Source: Ascidiella aspersa | Lineage: Eukaryota | Direction of reading: 5' to 3' | Length of the DNA: 64,000 bases | Assembly: GCA_963924565.1 (NCBI GenBank) | Contig: OZ004609.1 | Coordinates: 6,448,001-6,512,000 of the forward strand | Shown here: positions 25,401 to 36,177 of the stretch, in pieces | Layout of the letters: every line of letters begins with the position of its first letter | Numbering within the stretch: the first letter of the stretch is position 1 | Notes under the pieces: generated by a model | Databases searched by the model: none | What the model was told of the DNA's origin: nothing | The model's input: only the letters and a program-made list of their open reading frames with translations | Program-made: the position numbers and the translations under genes

Positions 25401-28400
25401 CGACCCCCCAGTTAACCCCTTGTGAGGTTGGGAACCACTGTAATAGATAATATGCGCAAATCCCCGACCCCACCATGCCACTGTGCAGTGTGTTACCATT
25501 ATCGTTGTATTTCTTTGTGAACATTTGCTTCAATGAACATGTATTTTGCTAAATATTCCACAAACACTCGAATTATGTGAAATGTTTTATGTTCTCAGTC
25601 TCTCAGATTGTTATGTAAATATGTGTTCTTGTATATTTGGACAATGGATATAGGCTACCAACTTTTTTACTGGTTAGTTTAGTTGACATAGCAGATAGCA
25701 ACAGTTCTGATACTGTTCTAACAGTTATTGTTGTGTTAAAGTGGACCTCAAGCCTTAAGACATAGGCCTAATATTAAGTGCATTGTTGTGGTTGTCCGTA
25801 GTGAAGTTATTTTGATGAATTGTTTATTGAATTGCATAATAGCCATTAATTATAATGTATGACCCTGTGGCCAGTTTTGAAAAGAGTTAGGCCGGATGAT
25901 TTGCATTTGGCAGTACGGAGGTCAATTTTGCCAGCTAGGGATTTTCAAAGTAAAATATGGGTATAAAAGAGAAAAACTCTTAGATATTTTAAATACTGCC
26001 AGTTATTCATGTTTTTGGAGAGTCAAATTTTTTTTAAATCGTTTTATTGCAGAAGTTGTTTGTAATTTGAATATAACAAGAAAGTGTCAAGTTTTGATGC
26101 GTCTATCTCTGTGGTATTATTTTCCCTAACATCCCCCAAGATGAACTTTCCTTGATATTACCTATCAGTTGGTAGTATGTAGAAGTGTCTTCCAAGTTTG
26201 TTGAAAAAGAAAAAGATTATTTAAACAAGGTGTATTGCAATAGACTTGTTTATTTCATTTAGGTGTAGGCTACTGGTAAGTAGGTGCCGGCTCCCGCTGC
26301 ATAAGTCTTTTAAGCGTTCCTTTTCAGTACAGACTCCAAAAAGCAGACCACTGAAATACCTGTCCTTAACTTCTTTAACTCTAGACCAAGTCACTTCACT
26401 CAGTTGATGTTGCTCGCAAAGTCGCAATGTTCGGTGCTGATCACACCTTAGTGAACACCGGTTAAATGTAGAGTGGTGTCAAATTAATGCTTGATAAAGG
26501 CACCAATAGGTAAATGTGGCCTCAAACTTGGTAATGTAAAGTATAGATGGATAGAGCTTTAATTGCTGGTTAATGTTTGTAATTTTCATCGTAGCTTTGT
26601 TTCTTTATTTTGTGTTGTTCCTTCAAGGTGTGTCTTTGTAGACTTTTGTTTGGTTATGTGAGGCTTAAAGTTCAGTTTGTTTGATATTATCTTCTTTTCA
26701 ACTGTTTGGTTTATTTTAAATTTCCCAACTTTAGACAAGTCATTTTTAATTCTCAGATGCAGAGTTGCGAGCAAACCAGATAACCGTGGCCAACATTAAA
26801 GTCAAATCTCAAGAAACCATCTTGGTTGAACTCCTGGTAGTTAACAGGAAGAATGTTGAAGTAGAAGGTTTTCACGAAATATTGTTCTTAAGCGGCAATG
26901 AGAACAATGTTACTTGGCTTAAGGTGGATGAATTCTGTCTGGCTGCAAAAGAAAATGCAATTAAAGAAGCAGAATCTAAGTTCAGCGACCAGGCAACGAA
27001 AACTAATTACATTGCAAAATATGGCAACTTTATAGTTATTACTGGAGGAGCTGGCTATGGCAAAACCACTTTGGGGATACAAATTCTGCAATATGTGTGT
27101 GATACTGAACCTGAATGTGGCTACATTTTCTATGTAAACCTGCCATCGTTAGACAACAGCAAAGAAATGAGTGTTTTTGAGTTCCTGATAAAGCTATTCA
27201 ACTCAAACTGGCAATATCATTTGGAAACAGATAATAAAATTCTGGAAAGAATCTCCAAATCCAATAATGTGTGGATTATCATGGATTCAATGGATGAAAC
27301 CGGTTTCAATCTATCAATGAAAGCACCCGTCATTGGTTTGTATGATAGAGCAAAACCAGAAGTCATTCTCCAAAACCTTTTGCGATCTGACATTCTTCGC
27401 AATGCTTTCAAGTATCTTATAACACGACCAGAAGCATATCTACAGTTGGACCCGGATTGCAAGTCACACTTTCCACTTGAGGTACTTGGTCTGGGCAAAA
27501 ATTCACAGGATTTACTTTTTAAGGAAATTTGCCAAAGTCAAGAGAAATATGAAAAGGTGAAAGAGGTTCTCAACCAAAATCCAGCAGCCAATGTCTTAAA
27601 CTTCATCCCATTATTTGCCAAAGCAATTCCAAAATACATTCTGAAGTATGGATTGGATGGTGGTGCATTTACTACTACTGATGTGTTCACATCTTATCTG
27701 AACGACTATATTCGCTCAGCTCACTTCAAGAATCACCCAAGTGTTCTTCACAAGCTCTCTGAATTAGCTTTGTTTGGAATGCTCCAAGAGAAAGTCGTCT
27801 TTAAAGCACACGATTTGGCCAAAGTTGGACTTGAAACAAACGGTTTGGAAGATTTTCTCAAATTTCAAGTTCAGTCTAATGATATCGGCCTTAAAATTCT
27901 GGAAGGAGACAATTTAATTTTGTTCAATCACAAGCTCCTGCAAGAGTTCTTCTCAGCTCTCAAGATTATGCTTGACACCCCCATTGAACGGTTTACAAAG
28001 CTACTGGAAAACTTAAAAAGTGTCAAGTGGGAAATGGTTCTTCAATTTATCTTCGGTCTGCTCAATCCGAAACTCCAAAGAAAGCTAAATGCACTGTTTC
28101 CAATCTCCTCAGCTGATGTTTCTGCCAAGAGAGGTTTGCTTAAGAATCTGCTTGTTAACATGGCTAAAGATTTCGCCCAAACATCTGAGAATGATTTCCC
28201 AGTTTCACTCCCTTTGTTATTTGAGCTAAATTTTGAGACTCATGCAAAATGGCAAGAGTTCCAAGGTCGTCCAGATGACAAGAGGTTGTTCAAGCTGTGC
28301 AGTCTCGCCTACGAATCTATGCTTGATGGCATCACAAGATCGGTTGTGGAAGTTTTTCCGGACATGGTTTTGCTTTCGCTCACGATTCTTCCCAGCCACA

Positions 28401-31400
28401 TGGCGAGTCTCTGTCATGTGCTTCGCGCCTCCGACAAACCAATCACTATCAACGTTGGAGCTTTCGGGGAACTAGCCAAGTTCATTGGTGATGGATTAAA
28501 ATTGCTGATTGAGACCGTTGCTGAAACACCACACACGGTTAGTTATTTAATAAATATATAAAGTATAAAATAATACTAATGTAGTTATTGCTTTTTTGAT
28601 GTATTTTGCTTTTCAGTGCTAAATAAGGCAACTAATTTTAGTCATAATTTCCCTGTATTCAAGTTTGCCCTGGCTTGATGCAGTTACTGAAAGTGCTTTT
28701 TTGTAAGTACTTTTTTGCTTTATGCTTCCAACCTTCGCATGTTATCCAATTCAGCTATTGTACCAATACAAATAATAATTAATCAATACACAGGCGCATA
28801 ACTTTTGACATTCCTTGGCATTTTTTTAACTAATTGCAGAATTAGGGTTAGTGACTTTAACACCAAGAATGTTGATATTTTACGATGGTATATAAATTAT
28901 GAGGTTTTAAAAGAAAAGTTTTAAATACAAAGTTTTTTTCTAATTACATATTTGGTAGTCAGTTATTGTTTTCCAATTCGTTACCAGAGGGGGGTTAACT
29001 CCAAATGGTGAATTCATATCAGTTTAGTTTGTGGTTTGTATATATTTACAACTAGCAAGCAACTTTTAAACATTTCCAGGCGGTACATCCCCTATTTAAT
29101 GAGGTATTATAGCTCTGTGTTACATTACTTGGGGACAAACAATTAATTCAGGTTGTTGAATATCTAGTTGGGTTTAGCGCGCTGTTTTTCACACATCGCT
29201 ATATTTTAGATACGCAAGTTCTACGTAGATGAGACCGCCATCAGCATTGCAACTCTTGCGCCACTGATTCCACACATGGAAGAATTGACGATCTGGCATG
29301 GCAACCTTTCTGTCGACGACATCAAACTTATCTGCGAAAGTCTGCAAAGGAAAACACAACCGGTAATAAATTAACGGCAATCATATTAAGTTTATAACAA
29401 ATTACATTATAAAGTTCAGTATATTATGACAGTGCAGAAAATTTCCTCCCTAAAGTAAAATAAAAAAATATATAGATGCTTTTCTATACAAAAGCACAGA
29501 AGTTTTACGATTGAAGTCATTTACTCTGTGTTATATTAGATTACATGCAGGTTGTCAATGTTGATGTGTGACACCTGAATTGTTTACATAAAACCTGTAA
29601 TTCCATTAAAGTCACTTGCATAATATGGCATAAGATATAGTCAAACCAGGCAAGGAACTGGTACAACTTCATCTACTTTGTTGCATTTAGTTAAAGTTTC
29701 TTAACCTGAGCTACAACAATCTCGATGAAGCTGGGGTGAAGCTGCTATCCGGGTGCATCCCCTACGTTGAGAGGCTAAGTATCAAGCAATGTGGACTCAC
29801 ATCGGACCATCTCCTGGTGTTGGTGAGCAGCATCGAACAACGACAACATCGTGTGAGTTTCTACAAGGTGTAGTAGTATTGTGTGATATTTTCGACACCC
29901 ATCCAATACAAGGCAATATGCAACTAACAAAAATTGGCTTTGTGGTTTAATCCAATGGTTTTAAACTGATCAAATTTGCGTAAAACTAAAATTGCATGTT
30001 TAGCTGCGAACACACAATAGACTTTTTTGCAAACCAGCACTATATGAACCCGAATTTTCTGTAAGCATCATTTTTTTGACCACAATACAGTAATAATATC
30101 TGTGACGGAACGAGACCTAAACATGTTTGAGAAGTCCTAAAATATTTGAAATAAGATCTAAATGCAAAAATAACACTTTAAACTGTAGGGATACGGCCTT
30201 CTATCTATTGATATGTTGCCTGGTGGAGCTAACTCTACTACTACTTGTATATATTTATTAATCATTTAACTCCTATTTTGTTTGGGGACAATGTTGATCA
30301 TAATATACACTACATGGCCTACAGTGATGGCAATTAATCACCAAACACTTTGCTAACATTTGTATATTCTAAATAAAAATAATCTCCTAAATGTTTAAAA
30401 CAAAAGCATGAAAACGTGATACATATACCAGTGTTTTGCCAAACTTTAATATTTAGCCCATTGAGTACAATGCAACACAATAAACTCCTTAAGAAATTCA
30501 ATCCCGTTTTATAAAGCATTTTTGTGTGTCAGTTCTCACTTAACTACAAACGTGATCTGTTATACAATCAAATAATGTGGTTCAAAAAATGCAAAGTTAT
30601 CATTGCCAGTAATGCATAACCCATACTCAAATAATTACACCGTGCATATAACCTCGACGAATATCTGCCTGAAGTTGACCTTAAGTAACCTCGTAGCGCA
30701 ATTTTGCCAACGCCAGCACATTTTAGATGGAATGTTACTTATCTCGCTTTAAGGAAAATGCAAACTCTGCACCAGGCATAACACGTTGCTCGCTCGCCCA
30801 ATAACGCTTGATTGGCACTTAATTATTAGGCTAAAGTTATCACGAGACGTGGAGTAATTGGTCGCCCGGAAACACGATGACGCTGCACTACCTAGAAACT
30901 TTTAAAGTAAGCAGATGTCTTTATCTCGACTTGCCACCCTCGTTTACACAATCAGGCGCAACCATCCGCAGTAAAACGAAGTATTCAGTATTGTTCTTTG
31001 AACATCCATAAATGAAACCCTACGATAAATGAATTTAAAAAACACTCCACGATTTGACGCAAAACTAGCAATTTAATGTGTATTTGAATGTGTCACTATT
31101 TGTTGGTCTTGCCATCATCAGTGTAAAATACAACTTGTATGTTTACACTAATGATGGCATTGGGTATTCTCGAAACGTTCGTTAACAGAATATGATGGAT
31201 TTAGTATTTTTATTGAAATTATTTTTGTGCTGCAAAGTTTGTTGGTCTTACTTAATAATAGTTTGAGTATTGAGTCCCCAGGAAGCCTTTTATAGCTGTC
31301 TGATGTTGTAGCTGTTATACACTTGGCATCAGTTTAGTGTTTTTGTTCTTGTGTGCTCCACTACGGGAGGTATATGTTAGTGTACGTCAGTGCTTCTCAA

Positions 31401-34400
31401 CCTATGGGTCGCCACCCAAAATTTTCGCTGTTCGATTTGGTTGGGACGCCGACCGCAGTAGATCATATGTTTATATACTAATTGAGATTGGTTCTGAGAA
31501 AGATTTCTTAATTAGGAAAATTAAGGAAGCAATACAAATAATGTCAAATTCGGAATTCTTTATGCTAATGCCTATTTTTTGTTCGCTTACAAGAAAAACA
31601 ATTGAGTCGCCAAAGCCTACTCGTCATACTTACGCTTAATGTTTGGGTCGCCGAGAAAAAAGGTTGAGAAGCACTAGTGTACGTAAAGGCTTATAATAGC
31701 AGTTACCTCACCTGCATACTATTACCTAACATACGGTAACGCCCAGGCAACCAACTAGTAGAACTTTGTATATTTTTTTTCATATAGATTGAGTTTCTTA
31801 ACTTGAGCTTCAACAATCTGGATGAAGGGCTGAATTTGCTACCCGAGTGCATTCCCTACATTGAGAGGCTCAGTATCATGCAATGTGGACTCACATCTGA
31901 CCAACTTATGGTGTTGGCGAGCAGCATCAAACAACGACAACATCCCGTAAGTTTTAACAAAGCAAAACGAGACTTAGAAACTCTTGATTGCCGAACCCGA
32001 CATTTCCATGCAATGATCGCCCTCAGTCAGACCAGGGACGAATAGAATGTGGTTCCAGATAATTAATTAACCCAATCCACAATTTACAGTTCCATACTTT
32101 TGGTGAAATATCATTGAACTTTGTGTCATTGTGTTTATTTTATACAAATCCACAATTTGTTTACAATAACTTATTTTCCACCCTTGTTAAAATGTGCCTG
32201 CCCATGTTTTGGGACGTTTGCCGCTTTTAACAACACAAACCATTTACAGAAATTTGATCAACATATTAAAAAGTAAAAGAATTCCAGACAGGAAATAATT
32301 TTGCCCCTTGTTTATTTCTGTTGTCTAAACCTCCTTGTATTTATGCAAATGGATTTGTTGCCCTTGTTTATTTCTGTTGCCTAAACATCCTTATGTTTAT
32401 GCAAATGGATTTGTAGCGAATGTAGGTATGCAGTTACGAGTAAGAAGGCGCTGGTTCTTAAGGAGAGGGCCGACAGCTGCCAAAGTCGCTTACACGTACT
32501 TTTATCTAACACCAAAGGAGCAGGCCACTAAAATAGCTGTCCTTAACTTCTTGAACTCTCGACAAAGTCACTTCACTAAGTGAATATTGCTCGTTGAGTT
32601 TCACAAATCTCAAAAACACACGGTATAACGAAGCGTTGATTCAGGCCGCACATAAGTAAGACGTATTTAAAAAGAATGAATGCGAAACGCTAAAAGCACC
32701 CAGTTCGGCGCTTGGTCTCGCGTCAGTGAATAACGGTCACGTGTATAGTGACGTCAAATTAGACAAAATCGAGTAATTTTGCATGTTAAATACTTCAGTT
32801 GCCCTTGTTTATTTCGGTTATCTAAACCTCCTTGTGTTTATGCCAATGGTTTGTTGCCCCTGGTTTATTTCTGTAGTCTCAACCCCCTTGTGTTTATACA
32901 GATGGATTGGTTGAACCTGAGTGGAAACAAGATCGGGTCACGTGGTGCTGGTTGCCTGGCAACTAGTGCGCACAAATTGAACAAGCTGTCGATGGAAGAT
33001 TGTGGAATCGATGAAGTTGAAGAACTGACTGAAGCAATCGCACGCAGGGAGCATCCAGTAAGTTGCCTTATCTAAACTCGATCGTGGCTTCCAGGGCGCT
33101 ACCACAAGGATTTATATATATCTTTAGATTTACCAAATTTCATTAGAAAAAGAGTGGCTTATATAAATGATAAATAACGAATTCGCGGTTTTCTCAACCT
33201 CATTTTGCCGCACTGAAGATGGCATAAGTACTTGCCGACACGTATGCAAATAAAAGAATGAATATTTTATCATTTATTTCCGCTACTCTTTTTGTACAGA
33301 ATATGAACAGATCCGTGTTTAGTGTTCCCAAATTTCATTATTGTGTCAAAATATGACGCAAGAAATTCCCGCAAATTGTGGCTAATCATCAAGGGTGGAT
33401 AAAAGAGTGATCGCCACCAAAGCTAATTTAATTTTTTTTTATTTATTTCGAATCATTCCCTGAGTAACCATAATGTTGAACTCAAAACTACAAAATTTAG
33501 AAGAAATTATTAAAAAAAAATATTTTGGTTCGTATTGAGGTCAAATAAATGTCTTTTCAGCAGCGTCGTTGAAGTGTCTGACCTGAATTAGTTTCTATTT
33601 TAATCGCAGCCTCGGATTGCATAAGAGAGTAAATGTATGAAGAGAAATTATTGGAATTATGAAGAGTCTGTCGTTAGTTTTTCATTGCGATAAATATTTC
33701 GTTTCAGTTCGGTTTGGTTATATATTCTTCGTCATACAGCGGTGAACACAATTAGTGGCGAAATACACCTGGCATATTGTCACCCCTTTTCGTTTTTTAA
33801 TGTGCAGGAATTGTAGACCGTCGTAGAATTATTCCCAGTATTAAAGTCTAATCTAAACACTAAATCGAATCGGAGCCCATACTTGGGTGATATCATGGGC
33901 GCCTTTCCTATCAATACCAATTTAATATGGGAAATTCAGCCATGATTTGCGGTCTCCGCAATTATTCTACCTTCAAAGGTGAAATTATCAACAAAACATT
34001 GGTAGGTTAACAAGGGATGTTTAAAGTAGTATATCGGATTATTAGATTGGAATCCATTTCATATCGGGTAACTGGAACCAAGATAGTTTACTGTTTTACC
34101 GTGTAAGGATGTGCCTAATTGTACATACGCGTGGCAATTTTGGATAATGACCTGTAGCTGTGGCAACACTTTTATCGTGCTTGCTTTAAATCAAGCCATG
34201 TCGTGCTTGCTCTAAATATAGCCAGTCAGCGTTTTTTCATGTAGTCAGCGTTTTCCCCCCACGGCTTCAGCGTTTACCGCCGCCTAATAGCAACTAAAAG
34301 TGTCAAACTAGCGATATTGGGTGAGCGACTAAAGTGTAATGCCAATGCAGGGAATTCGCAATTTCCTTAAATGCGAGAGTGGCAAAAGTAACATTTCATC

Positions 34401-36154
34401 GTATAACGTGCTGACCTATAGGCAATAAAGAATAGTAAACGCATTACTGGCAGTAGTAACTTTGTATTCTTTGCAGCAAATTATTTGGCAGGCGTAATAA
34501 CCGAATACGTTTGTAGTAAACTAAAACACAACAACATCTTATAAAACGAACTGAATTGTAAAGAGTTAAAAGGAGAAGGTAACTAATAAATAGTTTAAAA
34601 TATACTAGGATTCAATATTCTGGATCCGTTATTCTAGATACGAAACCTAATTTTTGTAGAATACCTTGGGATTACTTTAAATCCCTATTAACAAATGATG
34701 GTAGCCAAACTTCTCGGGCTTTAAGCAACTTTTAACCTGGAAAAATCATTTTTTAACGTTTATTTTCATCTTGTTTGACCATAGCAATGACGTCATTTGG
34801 TATATACTATTGGTATCGGAATAAAATGTTATGTATCTAGATCTTAAGACTGTTTATTTATTAAAACAGATAAAACATAAAATCATTTCTTAAAATCGAA
34901 TGATTCATTCGAATTAAGAAACTGATGATGCCTTATAGGCGTAATATCTGTTTTAATAAATAAACAGTCTTAAGATCTTTGGAAACAAAGACAAGAATCT
35001 TTCTTTTACATTTTATTGTCCGCGGGAGATCCTTACTTTCTAAAGTGTTTCAGCGTTATGTATCTAGATTTGAAATATACTATTATATGAGCCTCCATTT
35101 GTTATGAACATTCACGAGTGTAAGTTTGTTGTTTACCTCCACTTGTAATTTTTGGCAGATGGAGGTTCTCAATATCCGAAACAATCCACTTGGCGACCGC
35201 GGGGCCAGTGCGTTGGCAAGATGTCGTGGTAAGATTGATAGGTTGTTCAGTGACGATTGCGACTTTACATCAGCTGGAAAGCAAGAGTTGGAATCGGCCC
35301 AACGACGCCACCAAGTGAGAACTTGTTTCAACTATTCGCTGTTCAACCGAGCCGTTAGAAATTAGTGCAGATCTAAGCAAAACGGTCTACGACAATTAGG
35401 GCATTTAAGGGCAAAAAAGACTTTGAGGTCGTGGTAATTCACTAATTTGTAGACCTTTGTGAGGTCGTGGTAATGCACTAATTGGACCTTTAGGTAAACT
35501 CCCGGCAGAGATAAAATGAAAATATTGGCTGAAAACTCACAAAAAATAAGAATAAAACTGTGAGAAAGAATTAAAAATACTTTACACACGCTAACCTGAA
35601 CCCTAATCCATATAATGTGCGTTGATTAAATAATTATTTGAACGCTGGGAAAAATCCCAAACTCGGGTGGGCATCAGATAATTTCTCGTCCATTGTATAG
35701 GATTGTTATGTCACACATTGTTGTATTGGGGCCTAAAGCGTTTATTCTTATTAAATCAATTCAAAGTCTAAAAGTCAGACTTTTCCCTCATTTGAATGCC
35801 GTAATTGTCGTAGACTTTTTTGCCTAAAACAGCACTATTTTCTGACGGTTCTAGTGCGCTGTTTGATAAATTTGCATATTGCTGATAGTTGAACAACTGA
35901 CTGATGGTTGCTTTACGAGTAGAAACAACAGAATCGTGATTGTTCTTCGATAATTTTATTATATCCTGGTGTTAAAATAAAGCAACACAGCACGAGGAAA
36001 CTTTTGCCAATCAGCTATCGATACAGGATCTTGATAACCGTATTTAAAGGATTGAGACCACATTTTCAACGTGTCTGTCTTGTTTTTAACATCCTTTTCC
36101 CCCTAGGAAAGTCAACCAATCAAAAGAGGTTCGAAACAATGTCACGTGATGTGA
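19484..36154 (+). CDS. NLR (NACHT-LRR) immune receptor, ~952 aa, with RHIM-like N-terminus and CaaX C-terminus
   Basis: Phase-compatible exons: 19484-19546, 20005-20143, 21119-21160, 26757-28537 (NACHT: Walker A GGAGYGKTT, Walker B VWIIMDSMDE, sensor-1 LITRP, IPL, winged-helix FNHKLLQEFFSA), LRR exons 29210-29362, 29691-29852, 31788-31946, 32902-33057, 35159-35314 (LxxLNLSxNxL-type), and terminal exon 36107-36154 followed by AATAAA at 36172. The NACHT-LRR core is secure; the first three exons and the last exon are less certain. Confidence 0.88.
20337..20752. mobile_element. hAT-type MITE (GGAGTCGGACTCG-rich family), copy 2, in NLR intron 2
   Basis: TIR CAGGGCTGCGGAGTCGG-like / CCGACTCCACAGCCCTG; perfect TSD GTGGAAAC (20329-20336, 20753-20760). 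Confidence 0.9.
21721..24352 (+). mobile_element. Non-autonomous PIF/Harbinger-class DNA transposon with decayed Myb/SANT-like ORF, in NLR intron 3
   Basis: TIR TAGCCTTTCCACATGGCC / GGCCATGTGGAAAGGCTA; 3-bp TSD ATT; subterminal AAAGGTGGC repeats at both ends. Disrupted reading frame from ATG 22640 (MNSRAKWSEQATCNLII…FDAITKDI…NKWK) resembles Myb/SANT. Confidence 0.75.
22032..22226. mobile_element. Palindromic MITE with GG…CC ends (Merlin/Mutator-like), nested in the Harbinger-class element
   Basis: TIR GGCGCT(C/G)GTCTAGAATCCTACCACA; 8-bp TSD AAAATTTA. Further copies at 24432-24592, 25212-25359 (TSD CTTATTTC) and ~54975-55123. Confidence 0.8.
31388..31676. mobile_element. hAT-type MITE in NLR intron
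   Basis: TIR CAGTGCTTCTCAACCT / AGGTTGAGAAGCACTA; perfect TSD GTGTACGT. Explains the spurious ORF 31337-31639. Confidence 0.88.
32301..32910 (+). repeat. Four ~56-bp copies of an LRR exon acceptor region, split by an interspersed repeat
   Basis: Units start at 32301, 32358, 32799 and 32854. The insert at ~32415-32790 shares sequence with ~26270-26410. Confidence 0.8.
33210..33247 (+). ncRNA. Degenerate minimal type I hammerhead motif (Penelope-like element terminus)
   Basis: GCA-CTGAAGA-T-GGCA(loop)TGCC-GACA-C-GTA-TGC, followed by AATAAA. One core mismatch (GAAA>GACA). Confidence 0.5.
34839..34978. repeat. Perfect 34-bp inverted repeat around a hammerhead-like remnant
   Basis: 34839-34872 is the reverse complement of 34945-34978. 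Confidence 0.85.
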
Positions 36155-36171
36155 AGCAATGAGGCGTGACC

Positions 36172-36177
36172 AATAAA
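36172..36177 (+). promoter_or_regulatory. Candidate polyadenylation signal of the NLR CaaX exon
   Basis: AATAAA 17 nt after the TGA at 36152-36154. Confidence 0.5.

What the first reader, a model, noticed from the sequence alone, without database searches (positions are those of the whole stretch)
36107..36177. NLR terminal exon encodes a polybasic CaaX prenylation signal
Seen: a strong acceptor (…ATCCTTTTCCCCCTAG) opens a phase-0 exon in frame with the last LRR exon, reading ESQPIKRGSKQCHVM-TGA, with AATAAA 17 nt later. Established: C-a-a-M at the extreme C-terminus preceded by basic residues is a farnesylation and membrane-targeting signal (K-Ras4B type). NOD1/2 reach membranes by S-palmitoylation, and I know of no characterised prenylated animal NLR. 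Inference: the LRR sensor end is tethered to a membrane, which would concentrate the RHIM-like N-termini for nucleation.
Basis: partly seen in the sequence, partly recalled or inferred. Interest (0 to 1): 0.75.

Follow-up and report, generated by a model that had tools for sequence, protein, structure and literature searches.

The report
Possible lipid-anchor tail on NLR gene
A sea-squirt-type immune receptor gene (NACHT-LRR) is followed by a tiny conserved last exon that would end the protein in a basic stretch plus a farnesylation-type signal (CHVM), but only about four in ten sister genes keep it in frame and no RNA read yet shows that it is spliced on.

Summary
The last LRR exon (35159-35314) ends at a GTGAG donor. 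A strong acceptor at 36106 opens a phase-0 reading ESQPIKRGSKQCHVM-stop, and AATAAA lies 17 nt after the stop.

It is not a chance ORF or a dispersed repeat. The acceptor plus exon recurs only behind the last LRR exon of sister NLR genes, mostly in an array of 32 copies on another contig.

Tail states in 33 loci:
- 13 have a strong acceptor and an in-frame C-x-x-M/I end.
- 3 keep the end behind a weak acceptor.
- 10 are stopped or frameshifted.
- 6 lack the block.
- 1 older copy keeps the basic part but no cysteine.

Evidence for function:
- The block is an island of similarity inside an intron that otherwise cannot be aligned.
- Its indels against the nearest paralogue type are 39 and 3 nt, whereas intron indels are 1, 1, 1, 7 and 2 nt.

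Evidence against:
- The array copies are too young for ORF retention to mean much.
- The CHVM codons are no better conserved than the flanking non-coding DNA.
- This locus gave no locus-specific RNA reads and no splice joints in the one RNA run.

Prenylation remains a prediction. I found no report of a prenylated NLR. This scan earlier noted a CLLL tail on another NLR family of the same genome; I could not verify it.

The parts
26750..28558 (+). Large NACHT exon of the NLR gene (open frame of 603 codons)
   Evidence: Pfam NACHT E 2.2e-15, NOD2_WH E 1.3e-07, NLRC4_HD2 30 bits (below its cut-off of 33.1). There are 32 copies at 80-83% identity on contig C8.
29691..33057 (+). Three phase-0/phase-0 LRR cassette exons (29691-29852, 31788-31946, 32902-33057) with their introns
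   Evidence: Boundaries. Single exons give weak LRR_6/LRR_1 matches below the cut-offs.
35159..35314 (+). Last LRR exon (52 codons, ends ...ESAQRRHQ), followed by the donor GTGAGA at 35315
   Evidence: LRR_6 21.6 bits. 63 matches in the genome, and all 30 fetched loci have a GT(G/A)AG donor.
35315..36106 (+). Putative last intron (792 nt). It is collinear with paralogue introns of 278-551 nt apart from an inserted MITE
   Evidence: Alignment to L053/L048: 83% identity, gaps of 1, 1, 1, 7 and 2 nt.
35345..35856 (.). Window-specific MITE-like insertion in that intron, with ~60-nt terminal inverted repeats and an 8-bp target duplication CGCTGTT(C/T) at 35337-35344 and 35857-35864
   Evidence: Inverted repeat I1, 60 nt, 82% complementary. 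Absent from the three paralogues aligned. Boundaries. DNA word depth is far above the single-copy level.
36086..36106 (+). Polypyrimidine tract and AG acceptor (ttaacatccttttccccctag)
   Evidence: Homologous in the A-type, L053-type and L071 paralogue tails.
36107..36154 (+). Candidate terminal coding exon: ESQPIKRGSKQCHVM plus TGA. The Cys-His-Val-Met codons are at 36140-36151
   Evidence: An island of similarity with the older paralogue L071.
36172..36177 (+). AATAAA, created where paralogues read CCAAGAAG. Homology with all paralogues ends here
   Evidence: identity 0.49 beyond 36176.

Best explanation
The 48-nt piece at 36107-36154 is the 3'-terminal coding exon of a young NACHT-LRR (NLR) gene family of an ascidian-type genome. 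It is spliced in phase 0 to the last LRR cassette exon. Where intact, it ends the protein in a short basic stretch followed by Cys-His-Val-Met.

By the recalled rules for CaaX processing, such an end would be farnesylated on the Cys, trimmed of the last three residues and carboxymethylated. Together with the basic residues this would give weak, reversible binding of the LRR end to acidic membrane leaflets.

Shown here: the sequence features, their homology and position across the family, and that the homologous tail region of paralogues is present in sense-strand RNA. Inferred: use of the acceptor, prenylation, and membrane binding. The window's own copy is a dispersed member (contig C3; the array is on C8) with a MITE in the last intron and no detectable expression in the one RNA sample.
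For: 1. Position and specificity.
- The block 36086-36176 matches 26 places on C8 at 75-83% identity.
- All 26 exact copies of the 15-mer covering Cys-His-Val-Met-stop are the window plus 25 places in C8:0.34-1.74 Mb.
- Each lies 278-551 nt (792 nt in the window) behind a last LRR exon with a GT(G/A)AG donor. It is therefore a family-specific gene part, not a dispersed repeat.

2. Acceptor. The same pyrimidine tract plus AG stands directly before the homologous first codon in the window, in 18 A-type copies and in the older paralogue L071. In the L053 type a 39-nt in-frame insertion follows it.

3. Frame.
- Against L053/L048 the exon differs by gaps of 39 and 3 nt, whereas the intron has gaps of 1, 1, 1, 7 and 2 nt.
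- The variants KKRPKCHVM (-15 nt) and KNLQIRRRLKICHVM (+3 nt) also stay in frame.
- Their changes inside the last four codons are synonymous (TGT>TGC, GTG>GTT).

4. Conservation island. Between L071 (NACHT exon 74% identical) and the window, L053 and L036, only the last LRR exon with about 22 nt of intron and the acceptor-plus-exon block (49-72 nt, 75-86% identity) align. The intron does not.

5. RNA. About 30 reads of the stranded run X3 cover 36140-36173 with the paralogue letter at 36163 (29 of 32 reads with the first mate on -, 2 of 2 on +). They have the same polarity as the reads on LRR exons. Their loose-end consensus equals the paralogues' second ('B') copy of the tail.

6. Prenyltransferase beta-type exons lie at 3 loci.

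7. Two RefSeq models of ascidian NACHT proteins among the relatives end in ...CCLLQ (Clavelina lepadiformis XP_076802100.1) and ...CCIIV (Ciona intestinalis XP_078490682.1).
Against: - No read shows the junction. X3 gave no joints at all on 31650-37600. 344 of its 358 laid reads were only partly on the stretch. Depth on 35829-36027 and 36227-37022 was 0. Only about 6% of one run was read.
- The sense RNA over the paralogues' B copy fits a long unspliced 3' end as well as a spliced terminal exon.
- Only 13 of 33 loci have a strong acceptor plus in-frame CaaX. The others are 7 KN-stop, 2 frameshift, 1 ES-stop, 3 weak acceptor, 6 without the block, and 1 (L071) reading ENRPIKKRVNVT-stop without a Cys.
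- 31 of 32 C8 NACHT exons are open, so tail loss does not track gene decay.
- Array copies differ by only a few percent, so a 14-codon ORF staying open in about half of them is roughly what I would expect without selection (my rough estimate, not a computation).
- In 18 A-type copies the basic part is the most variable stretch, and the CHVM codons are no better conserved than the intron and 3' flank.
- The core GTCACGTGATGTG is intact even in out-of-frame copies, in non-coding B copies and in L071. This could mean a constraint at the DNA or RNA level.
- Window-versus-L053 identity is 0.84 in the tail against 0.83 in the intron.
- More distant relatives (L061-L064) have a donor but no such exon within 4.5-5 kb.
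Confidence: 0.5

Rival explanations
1. The donor after the last LRR exon is a leftover of cassette-exon duplication and is not used. Transcripts would run on, so the protein ends ...RRHQ plus VRTCFNYSLFNRAVRN in the window (VRTCFN in the array). The conserved block would then be part of a long 3' UTR, or a regulatory DNA/RNA element containing a palindromic E-box-like TCACGTGA between CCAAT-type motifs (motif names recalled), whose CaaX reading is accidental.
For: - The read-through frames and stops are in the sequence.
- The first ~20 nt of the intron are highly conserved.
- The core GTCACGTGATGTG is intact in copies where it cannot code for CHVM: the KN-stop, frameshifted and B copies, and L071.
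- CHVM is no better conserved than its flanks.
- B copies without an in-frame acceptor are present in sense RNA.
- No joints were seen in the RNA run.
Against: - The donor is the same GT(G/A)AG as at the internal cassette exons and is kept even in relatives with 44-65% identity in the last exon.
- A strong pyrimidine tract plus AG is kept directly before the block in four lineages.
- Indels in the block are multiples of three, while those in the intron are not.
- Being transcribed argues against a pure promoter element.
Confidence: 0.22
2. The exon is used, but the CaaX end has no selected function. The ancestral role of the tail would be just to terminate the protein with a short basic peptide, as in the older copy that ends ENRPIKKRVNVT. 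CHVM would have arisen by a 1-nt shift and now drifts, being lost freely among paralogues. Any prenylation would be incidental.
For: - L071 keeps the acceptor and ENRPIKKR but has no Cys.
- 10 of 33 loci carry stops or shifts while their NACHT exons are open.
- The basic part is a hot spot of A-run slippage.
- The window's basic stretch is weak.
Against: - The window and the array diverged by about 17-19% in this region yet both keep C-H-V-M-stop in frame through two in-frame indels.
- Substitutions in the last four codons of in-frame copies are synonymous or Met>Ile.
- CaaX-type ends also appear in two other ascidians' NACHT gene models.
Confidence: 0.18
3. The window's copy is a silent or decaying dispersed duplicate. 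It was copied to contig C3 with a breakpoint about 20 nt after the stop codon and later hit by a MITE in the last intron, so its intact-looking tail has no present function whatever the array genes do.
For: - Homology to all paralogues ends at about 36175.
- The MITE carries a target-site duplication and is absent from the three paralogues aligned (L053, L048, L034).
- No locus-specific RNA reads were seen.
Against: - The NACHT exon and all four LRR exons are open with intact splice sites.
- An AATAAA sits exactly at the breakpoint.
- One RNA sample read at about 6% cannot show silence for an inducible immune gene.
Confidence: 0.1

Closest known systems
K-Ras4B / Rac1-type C-terminal 'polybasic + CaaX' membrane-targeting signal
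   Same: A Cys at the fourth position from the end, followed by a small aliphatic a2 residue and Met as in CVIM, at the extreme C-terminus, preceded by Lys/Arg. The two-signal logic (lipid plus charge) is described in PMC11392533 (passages read), citing Hancock et al. 1990 and 1991.
   Different: The carrier is a ~1000-residue NACHT-LRR receptor, not a small GTPase. The basic stretch is much weaker: 3 K/R in this copy and 5 in most sisters, against a net +8 in the K-Ras-type probes named in that paper. The a1 residue is His. No lipid modification has been shown.
Vertebrate NLR membrane attachment: NLRP3 polybasic region plus S-acylated Cys-130; NOD1/NOD2 S-palmitoylation
   Same: These are innate NACHT-LRR receptors whose function needs a lipid anchor combined with a basic patch. 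An artificial NLRP3 polybasic region plus CVIM goes to the plasma membrane (PMC11392533, abstract and passages).
   Different: There the lipid is a reversible thioester acyl group near the N-terminal side of the NACHT domain. Here it would be an irreversible prenyl thioether at the far LRR end, on its own exon. The NOD1/2 palmitoylation statement is recalled and was not read here.
Prenylated guanylate-binding proteins (GBP1, GBP2, GBP5)
   Same: Cell-autonomous immune proteins with a C-terminal CaaX box, and in GBP1 an adjacent basic patch, which let them coat membranes and pathogens. I saw only the listing and abstract start of PMC9005921; the details are recalled.
   Different: They belong to an unrelated fold (dynamin-like GTPase) and are not STAND/NACHT proteins. 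Prenylation of GBPs has been shown experimentally.
RefSeq gene models of other ascidians' NACHT proteins with CaaX-like ends (Clavelina lepadiformis XP_076802100.1 ...CCLLQ; Ciona intestinalis XP_078490682.1 ...CCIIV)
   Same: NACHT proteins of ascidians, related to the window's NACHT exon (E 7.5e-52 and 1.3e-33, 32% and 28% identity), that end in Cys-aliphatic-aliphatic-X.
   Different: Their tails are unrelated in sequence to this one. They have an extra upstream Cys (Ras-like second signal by acylation, inferred) instead of a basic run.

Membership tests
NLR (NACHT-LRR STAND receptor) | NACHT NTPase domain with its helical and winged-helix extensions | tested here: met
   Pfam NACHT 57.4 bits (cut-off 26.7), NOD2_WH 32 bits (cut-off 23.1), NLRC4_HD2 30 bits (below its cut-off of 33.1) on 26750-28558.
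NLR (NACHT-LRR STAND receptor) | C-terminal ribonuclease-inhibitor-type leucine-rich repeats | tested here: inconclusive
   Searched exon by exon. LRR_6 scored 17.6, 23.0 and 21.6 bits on three of the four exons, just under the cut-off of 23.4; the fourth exon gave only LRR_1 at 12.1 bits. The pattern and the 52-54-codon phase-0 cassettes fit. The joined LRR region was not searched, by rule.
CaaX prenylation substrate (farnesyltransferase type) | Cys exactly four residues from the C-terminus, aliphatic a2, and X = Met/Ser/Gln/Ala for farnesyltransferase (rules recalled) | tested here: met
   The frame ends TGT CAC GTG ATG TGA = C-H-V-M-stop. The a1 = His is unusual but, from recall, that position is tolerant. 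No predictor such as PrePS was available.
CaaX prenylation substrate (farnesyltransferase type) | The motif really is the protein's C-terminus, i.e. the exon is spliced on and translated | tested here: inconclusive
   One RNA run, about 6% read: no joints and no locus-specific reads on 31650-37600. Paralogue tail sequence is present in sense RNA.
CaaX prenylation substrate (farnesyltransferase type) | The host has protein prenyltransferases | tested here: met
   PF00432 gave 9 exon matches over the cut-off at 3 loci (C1:12.42 Mb, C1:27.57 Mb, C9:14.65 Mb). Which locus is the farnesyltransferase beta subunit was not resolved.
CaaX prenylation substrate (farnesyltransferase type) | Covalent isoprenoid on the Cys | not testable with these tools
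   Needs metabolic labelling or mass spectrometry.
K-Ras4B-type polybasic second signal | A dense run of Lys/Arg (about six or more) directly upstream of the CaaX box | tested here: not met
   The window has K, R, K and one E in the 11 residues before the Cys. Sister copies have 5 K/R in 10. It is basic, but not a K-Ras-grade polybasic domain.
Conserved functional exon | Better conserved than the neighbouring intron, and frame kept across paralogues | tested here: inconclusive
   For: an island of similarity with L071 and 39-nt and 3-nt gaps against 1, 1, 1, 7 and 2 nt in the intron. Against: identity 0.84 versus 0.83 in the intron, only 13 of 33 loci intact, and no extra conservation of the CHVM codons within the array.

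The most novel reading that the evidence does not exclude
Ascidian NLRs repeatedly carry C-terminal lipid-anchor tails on their own small last exons. Examples are CHVM in this family, a CLLL tail reported by this scan for another family of the same genome (unverified), and CCLLQ and CCIIV in Clavelina and Ciona gene models. These receptors would then survey membranes with the LRR end tethered, much as prenylated GBPs do. Within the array, copies with an intact CaaX, a two-residue KN end or no tail at all would form membrane-bound and soluble receptor pools, a new way to diversify an NLR repertoire.
Probability: 0.3. Interest if true: 0.75.

Novelty: new variant of a known kind. Interest (0 to 1): 0.5.

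Why it matters
Known animal NLRs reach membranes by S-acylation and basic patches near the NACHT domain. A genetically encoded prenyl anchor at the LRR end would be a different geometry for receptor activation: ligand-sensing end on the membrane, signalling end free. It would parallel the GBP system.

It is directly testable with a 15-residue tail fused to GFP and a Cys-to-Ser control. The family also offers natural controls, namely sister genes with and without the signal. If the exon is not used, the case is a useful warning: short CaaX-like ORFs behind cassette-exon donors can be conserved for other reasons.

Tried and rejected
Dispersed repeat or transposon fragment. The raised DNA depth and the loose-ended RNA reads at 36140-36173 first suggested this. 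I rejected it because all 26 exact copies of the core 15-mer are the window plus 25 places inside the C8 NLR array, each behind a last LRR exon.

The paralogues' second ('B') copy as an alternative CaaX exon. Rejected: no in-frame acceptor exists. The nearby TTAG acceptor gives GIPRKIDQSKND-stop. It is most simply a duplicated piece inside the 3' UTR.

Tail state as a marker of pseudogenes. Rejected: 31 of 32 C8 NACHT exons are open.

A tree to count independent losses. The array is too young and the tree too unresolved (9 of 27 inner branches starred) to count events. The window and L057 sit on long branches because their flanks are not homologous.

More distant paralogues L061-L064 and the six tail-less array copies L065-L070. 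No tail block within 4.5-6 kb. The scan for basic CaaX mini-exons found none there; its only candidate, a far-downstream one in L071, looks spurious.

The scan's lead on a CLLL-tailed NLR family. I sampled one C7 gene (18 kb, L072 and L073) and found no such exon. I could not locate their 'NLR-A'. The lead remains unverified.

Word search with the NACHT exon. None of the 8000 scored candidates reached E <= 1e-20. The full search found 540 relatives at E <= 0.001, the best at 38% identity, so there is no close species in which to test tail conservation.

The literature search for 'CHVM' was mis-set (any one of two terms) and tells nothing. Supplementary files were not consulted.
Full report
WHAT IS THERE

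The window carries a complete-looking NACHT-LRR gene on the + strand.
- A single 603-codon open exon (26750-28558) gives Pfam NACHT (E 2.2e-15), NOD2_WH and a sub-threshold NLRC4_HD2 match.
- Downstream lie four LRR cassette exons of 52-54 codons: 29691-29852, 31788-31946, 32902-33057 and 35159-35314.
- All four are phase 0 at both ends, all start after a yAG, and all end ...R(Q/E/R)H(R/P/Q)|GT(G/A)AG. Singly they give weak LRR_6 or LRR_1 matches.
- After the last one the sequence reads CAC CAA|GTGAGA. 792 nt later, atccttttccccctag|GAA AGT ... TGT CAC GTG ATG TGA occupies 36107-36154, with AATAAA at 36172-36177.

If the donor were ignored, the frame would run on for 16 codons (VRTCFNYSLFNRAVRN) to a TAG.

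THE INTRON HOLDS A PRIVATE TRANSPOSON

A 60-nt inverted repeat, 82% complementary, brackets 35349-35851. Alignment with three paralogues shows that 35345-35856 is an insertion absent from them. It is flanked by an 8-bp duplication CGCTGTT(C/T). DNA word depth over it is hundreds of times the single-copy level. Without it the intron would be about 280 nt, like the 278 nt of the most similar paralogues.

NOT A DISPERSED REPEAT BUT A FAMILY-SPECIFIC GENE PART

Reads of the RNA run and raised DNA depth at 36140-36173 first suggested a repeat.
- Searching the organism's own 308.6-Mb assembly with 36060-36260 gave 26 further matches, all on contig C8 between 0.34 and 1.74 Mb. They are 75-83% identical and cover 36086-36176, that is the pyrimidine tract, the exon and about 20 nt after the stop.
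- The 15-mer spanning Cys-His-Val-Met-stop occurs exactly 26 times: the window and 25 places in that C8 interval. With one mismatch there are 68 places in the genome, against 23 for the reversed control.
- The C8 interval is a tandem array of sister NLR genes. It holds 32 NACHT exons 80-83% identical to the window's, 31 of them without a stop. Each is followed by LRR cassettes and a last LRR exon ending ...ESA(E/K)RRHQ|GTGAG.
- The tail block lies 278-551 nt behind that donor.

CENSUS OF TAILS

I examined 33 loci: the 30 best last-LRR-exon loci, including the window, plus three further loci known only (L003, L009, L014). Two of those three have a last LRR exon listed but not fetched. L003's last exon is fragmentary with two stops.

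| Tail state | Loci |
|---|---|
| Strong acceptor, phase-0 reading ending C-x-x-M/I-stop | 13 |
| Same end behind a weak AAAAAG acceptor (LSNCHVM) | 3 |
| KN-stop (CGA>TGA in the third codon) | 7 |
| Frameshift in the A-run | 2 |
| ES-stop | 1 |
| No block within ~6 kb downstream | 6 |
| Older paralogue L057/L071: ENRPIKKRVNVT-stop, no Cys | 1 |

- The 13 intact tails are the window (ESQPIKRGSKQCHVM); six copies of KNRPIKK(R/K)SNCHVM or KNRPINKRSNCHVM; KNQPIKKRSNCHVM; KNRPIKKISHCHVI; KKRPKCHVM; KNLQIRRRLKICHVM twice; and ESSVSVP(A/T)SGDSTKNRPIKKRSNCHVM twice.
- L057/L071 lies at C3:32.42 Mb and its NACHT exon is 74% identical to the window's. A 1-nt difference puts the stop inside CACGTGA.
- Sources.
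- Many array genes carry a second copy of the block 245 nt further on ('B'). It has no in-frame acceptor.

IS THE BLOCK UNDER CONSTRAINT? THE EVIDENCE IS MIXED

For constraint:
- Between L071 and the window, L053 and L036, sensitive BLAST aligns only the last LRR exon with about 22 nt of intron, and the acceptor-plus-exon block (49-72 nt, 75-86% identity). The introns do not align.
- The same pyrimidine tract and AG precede the homologous first codon in the window, the A-type copies and L071. In the L053 type a 39-nt insertion follows the AG and stays in frame.
- Against L053/L048 the exon's gaps are 39 and 3 nt, while the intron's five gaps are 1, 1, 1, 7 and 2 nt.
- The two length variants (-15 nt, +3 nt) remain in frame. 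The substitutions seen inside the last four codons of in-frame copies are TGT>TGC, GTG>GTT and ATG>ATT.

Against constraint:
- The array copies differ by only a few percent (end branches of median 0.019). A 14-codon ORF remaining open in roughly half of them is about what I would expect without selection (my rough estimate, not a computation).
- In 18 aligned A-type copies the basic part is the most variable stretch. The CHVM codons are no better conserved than the intron upstream or the 60 nt downstream.
- Window-versus-L053 identity is 0.84 in the tail, 0.83 in the intron and 0.81 in the last LRR exon.
- The 13-mer GTCACGTGATGTG is untouched even where it cannot encode CHVM: the KN-stop and shifted copies, the B copies and L071.
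- More distant relatives (last exon 44-65% identical) keep a GT donor but show no tail block and no basic CaaX mini-exon within 4.5-5 kb.

RNA

One RNA run of the same species label was offered (X3, stranded, paired). About 6% of it was read (7.79 million records).
- On 31650-37600 it laid 358 reads, 344 of them only partly on the stretch. There were no joints and no clusters of molecule ends.
- Reads on the LRR exons carry paralogue letters, for example 31907 T>C in 7 of 7 reads.
- At 36140-36173 about 30 reads match for 34 nt only. They carry T instead of G at 36163 (29 of 32 reads with the first mate on -, 2 of 2 on +). Their loose ends have a consensus equal to the paralogues' B copy.
- A-type tails differ at two of these 34 positions, so they fall below the 95% threshold and could not be seen.
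- Polarity is the same as for the LRR-exon reads.

The paralogues' tail region is therefore in sense RNA. This fits a terminal exon with a 3' UTR of at least 330 nt, but it equally fits an unspliced read-through. The window's own copy gave nothing that is clearly its own, and depth is 0 on both sides of the 34-nt patch. The junction remains unobserved.

RELATIVES ELSEWHERE
- The word search found nothing at E <= 1e-20.
- The full search found 540 relatives at E <= 0.001, the best only 38% identical.
- All seven representatives that carry a name (of the nine I looked up) are ascidian: Phallusia mammillata, Clavelina lepadiformis and Ciona intestinalis. This agrees with the scan's earlier 'sea squirt' note.
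- Of the 154 proteins held at that point, 7 have Cys at the fourth-last position. Two of these are canonical and sit in RefSeq models: Clavelina XP_076802100.1 ending ...NICRCCLLQ (its isoform X1 ends differently) and Ciona XP_078490682.1 ending ...KQILICCIIV.
- Many of the 154 are bare NACHT-exon ORFs from unannotated contigs whose ends mean nothing, so this is a hint and not a rate.

HOW IT WOULD WORK

The following rests on recalled knowledge of CaaX processing and on passages of PMC11392533 about two-signal membrane binding.
- A C-terminal C-H-V-M would be farnesylated, since Met at X and Val at a2 favour farnesyltransferase. With a basic upstream stretch, geranylgeranylation is a possible alternative.
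- It would then be cleaved after the Cys and methylated.
- The lipid gives weak affinity for any membrane, and the neighbouring Lys/Arg bias it to acidic leaflets.
- Here the basic stretch is modest (3 K/R in this copy, 5 in most sisters). Avidity in an oligomerised NLR would probably be needed for stable binding. That last step is inference.
- The genome encodes prenyltransferase beta-type proteins at three loci.
I did not test it.

COMPARISON AND NOVELTY

The design is that of Ras/Rho tails and of prenylated GBPs, placed on an NLR. Vertebrate NLRs use S-acylation plus basic patches instead (PMC11392533).
- Three literature searches and a term search in one review of metazoan NLR evolution (PMC11508797; 0 occurrences of 'prenyl' or 'CaaX') turned up no described prenylated NLR. 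Subscription journals and supplements were not covered.
- This scan has already reported a similar idea on other DNA of the same genome: s1-790850, a CLLL tail on another NLR family. It also reported CaaX tails on a GBP-like and a cathepsin-like gene. I treat these as leads only.

VERDICT

I put about 0.5 on 'real terminal exon giving a prenylatable end in the intact members'. The main rival is read-through with a conserved non-coding block. One well-aimed RNA experiment on the array genes would settle it.

Noticed in passing
window 35345-35856: MITE-like element (512 nt, ~60-nt terminal inverted repeats, 8-bp target duplication CGCTGTT[C/T]) inserted in the last intron of this copy only. It is very high-copy in the genome, judged by DNA word depth.
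   Followed up: partly
window 34839-34978: Perfect 34-nt inverted repeat with a 72-nt spacer, lying in the bin with extreme DNA word depth (about 40,000-51,000 against ~40-90 for single copy) and RNA reads on both strands. Probably another high-copy hairpin element, just upstream of the last LRR exon.
   Followed up: no
window 37421-37600: The highest DNA word depth of the laid stretch (about 100,000-150,000), with RNA reads on both strands and many loose ends at 37428-37476. A very abundant repeat boundary.
   Followed up: no
window 32270-32900 and paralogue loci (e.g. L028, L012): The intron before the LRR exon at 32902 contains tandemly repeated copies of the exon's own acceptor region. The repeated open-frame motif is of the type ...LVYFC.LN.LVF.QMD.L, with DNA depth in the thousands. 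It is a stack of pseudo-acceptors in front of a cassette exon.
   Followed up: no
G000 C8:0.33-1.75 Mb: Tandem array of 32 sister NLR genes (NACHT exons 80-83% identical to the window's, 31 open). Most are on the - strand, with a small + strand group at 0.33-0.45 Mb. The window's gene on C3 is a dispersed member whose homology ends ~20 nt after the stop codon.
   Followed up: partly
paralogue loci such as L002 1259-1327 (- strand) and L036: A second, non-coding duplicate of the tail block ('B' copy) lies 245 nt downstream of the coding one. It carries ATTAAA where the coding copy has ATCAAA, and it is the version seen in the RNA reads.
   Followed up: partly
window 36140-36176 and all copies: The tail block contains a palindromic E-box-like TCACGTGA flanked by CCAAT-type motifs (motif names recalled). 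The core is intact even in copies where it cannot be coding.
   Followed up: partly
G000 C7:0.3-6.6 Mb: A second, much larger NLR array (dozens of NACHT exons 47-50% identical to the window's). In the one gene sampled, the LRR exons are spread over more than 13 kb (L072, L073).
   Followed up: partly
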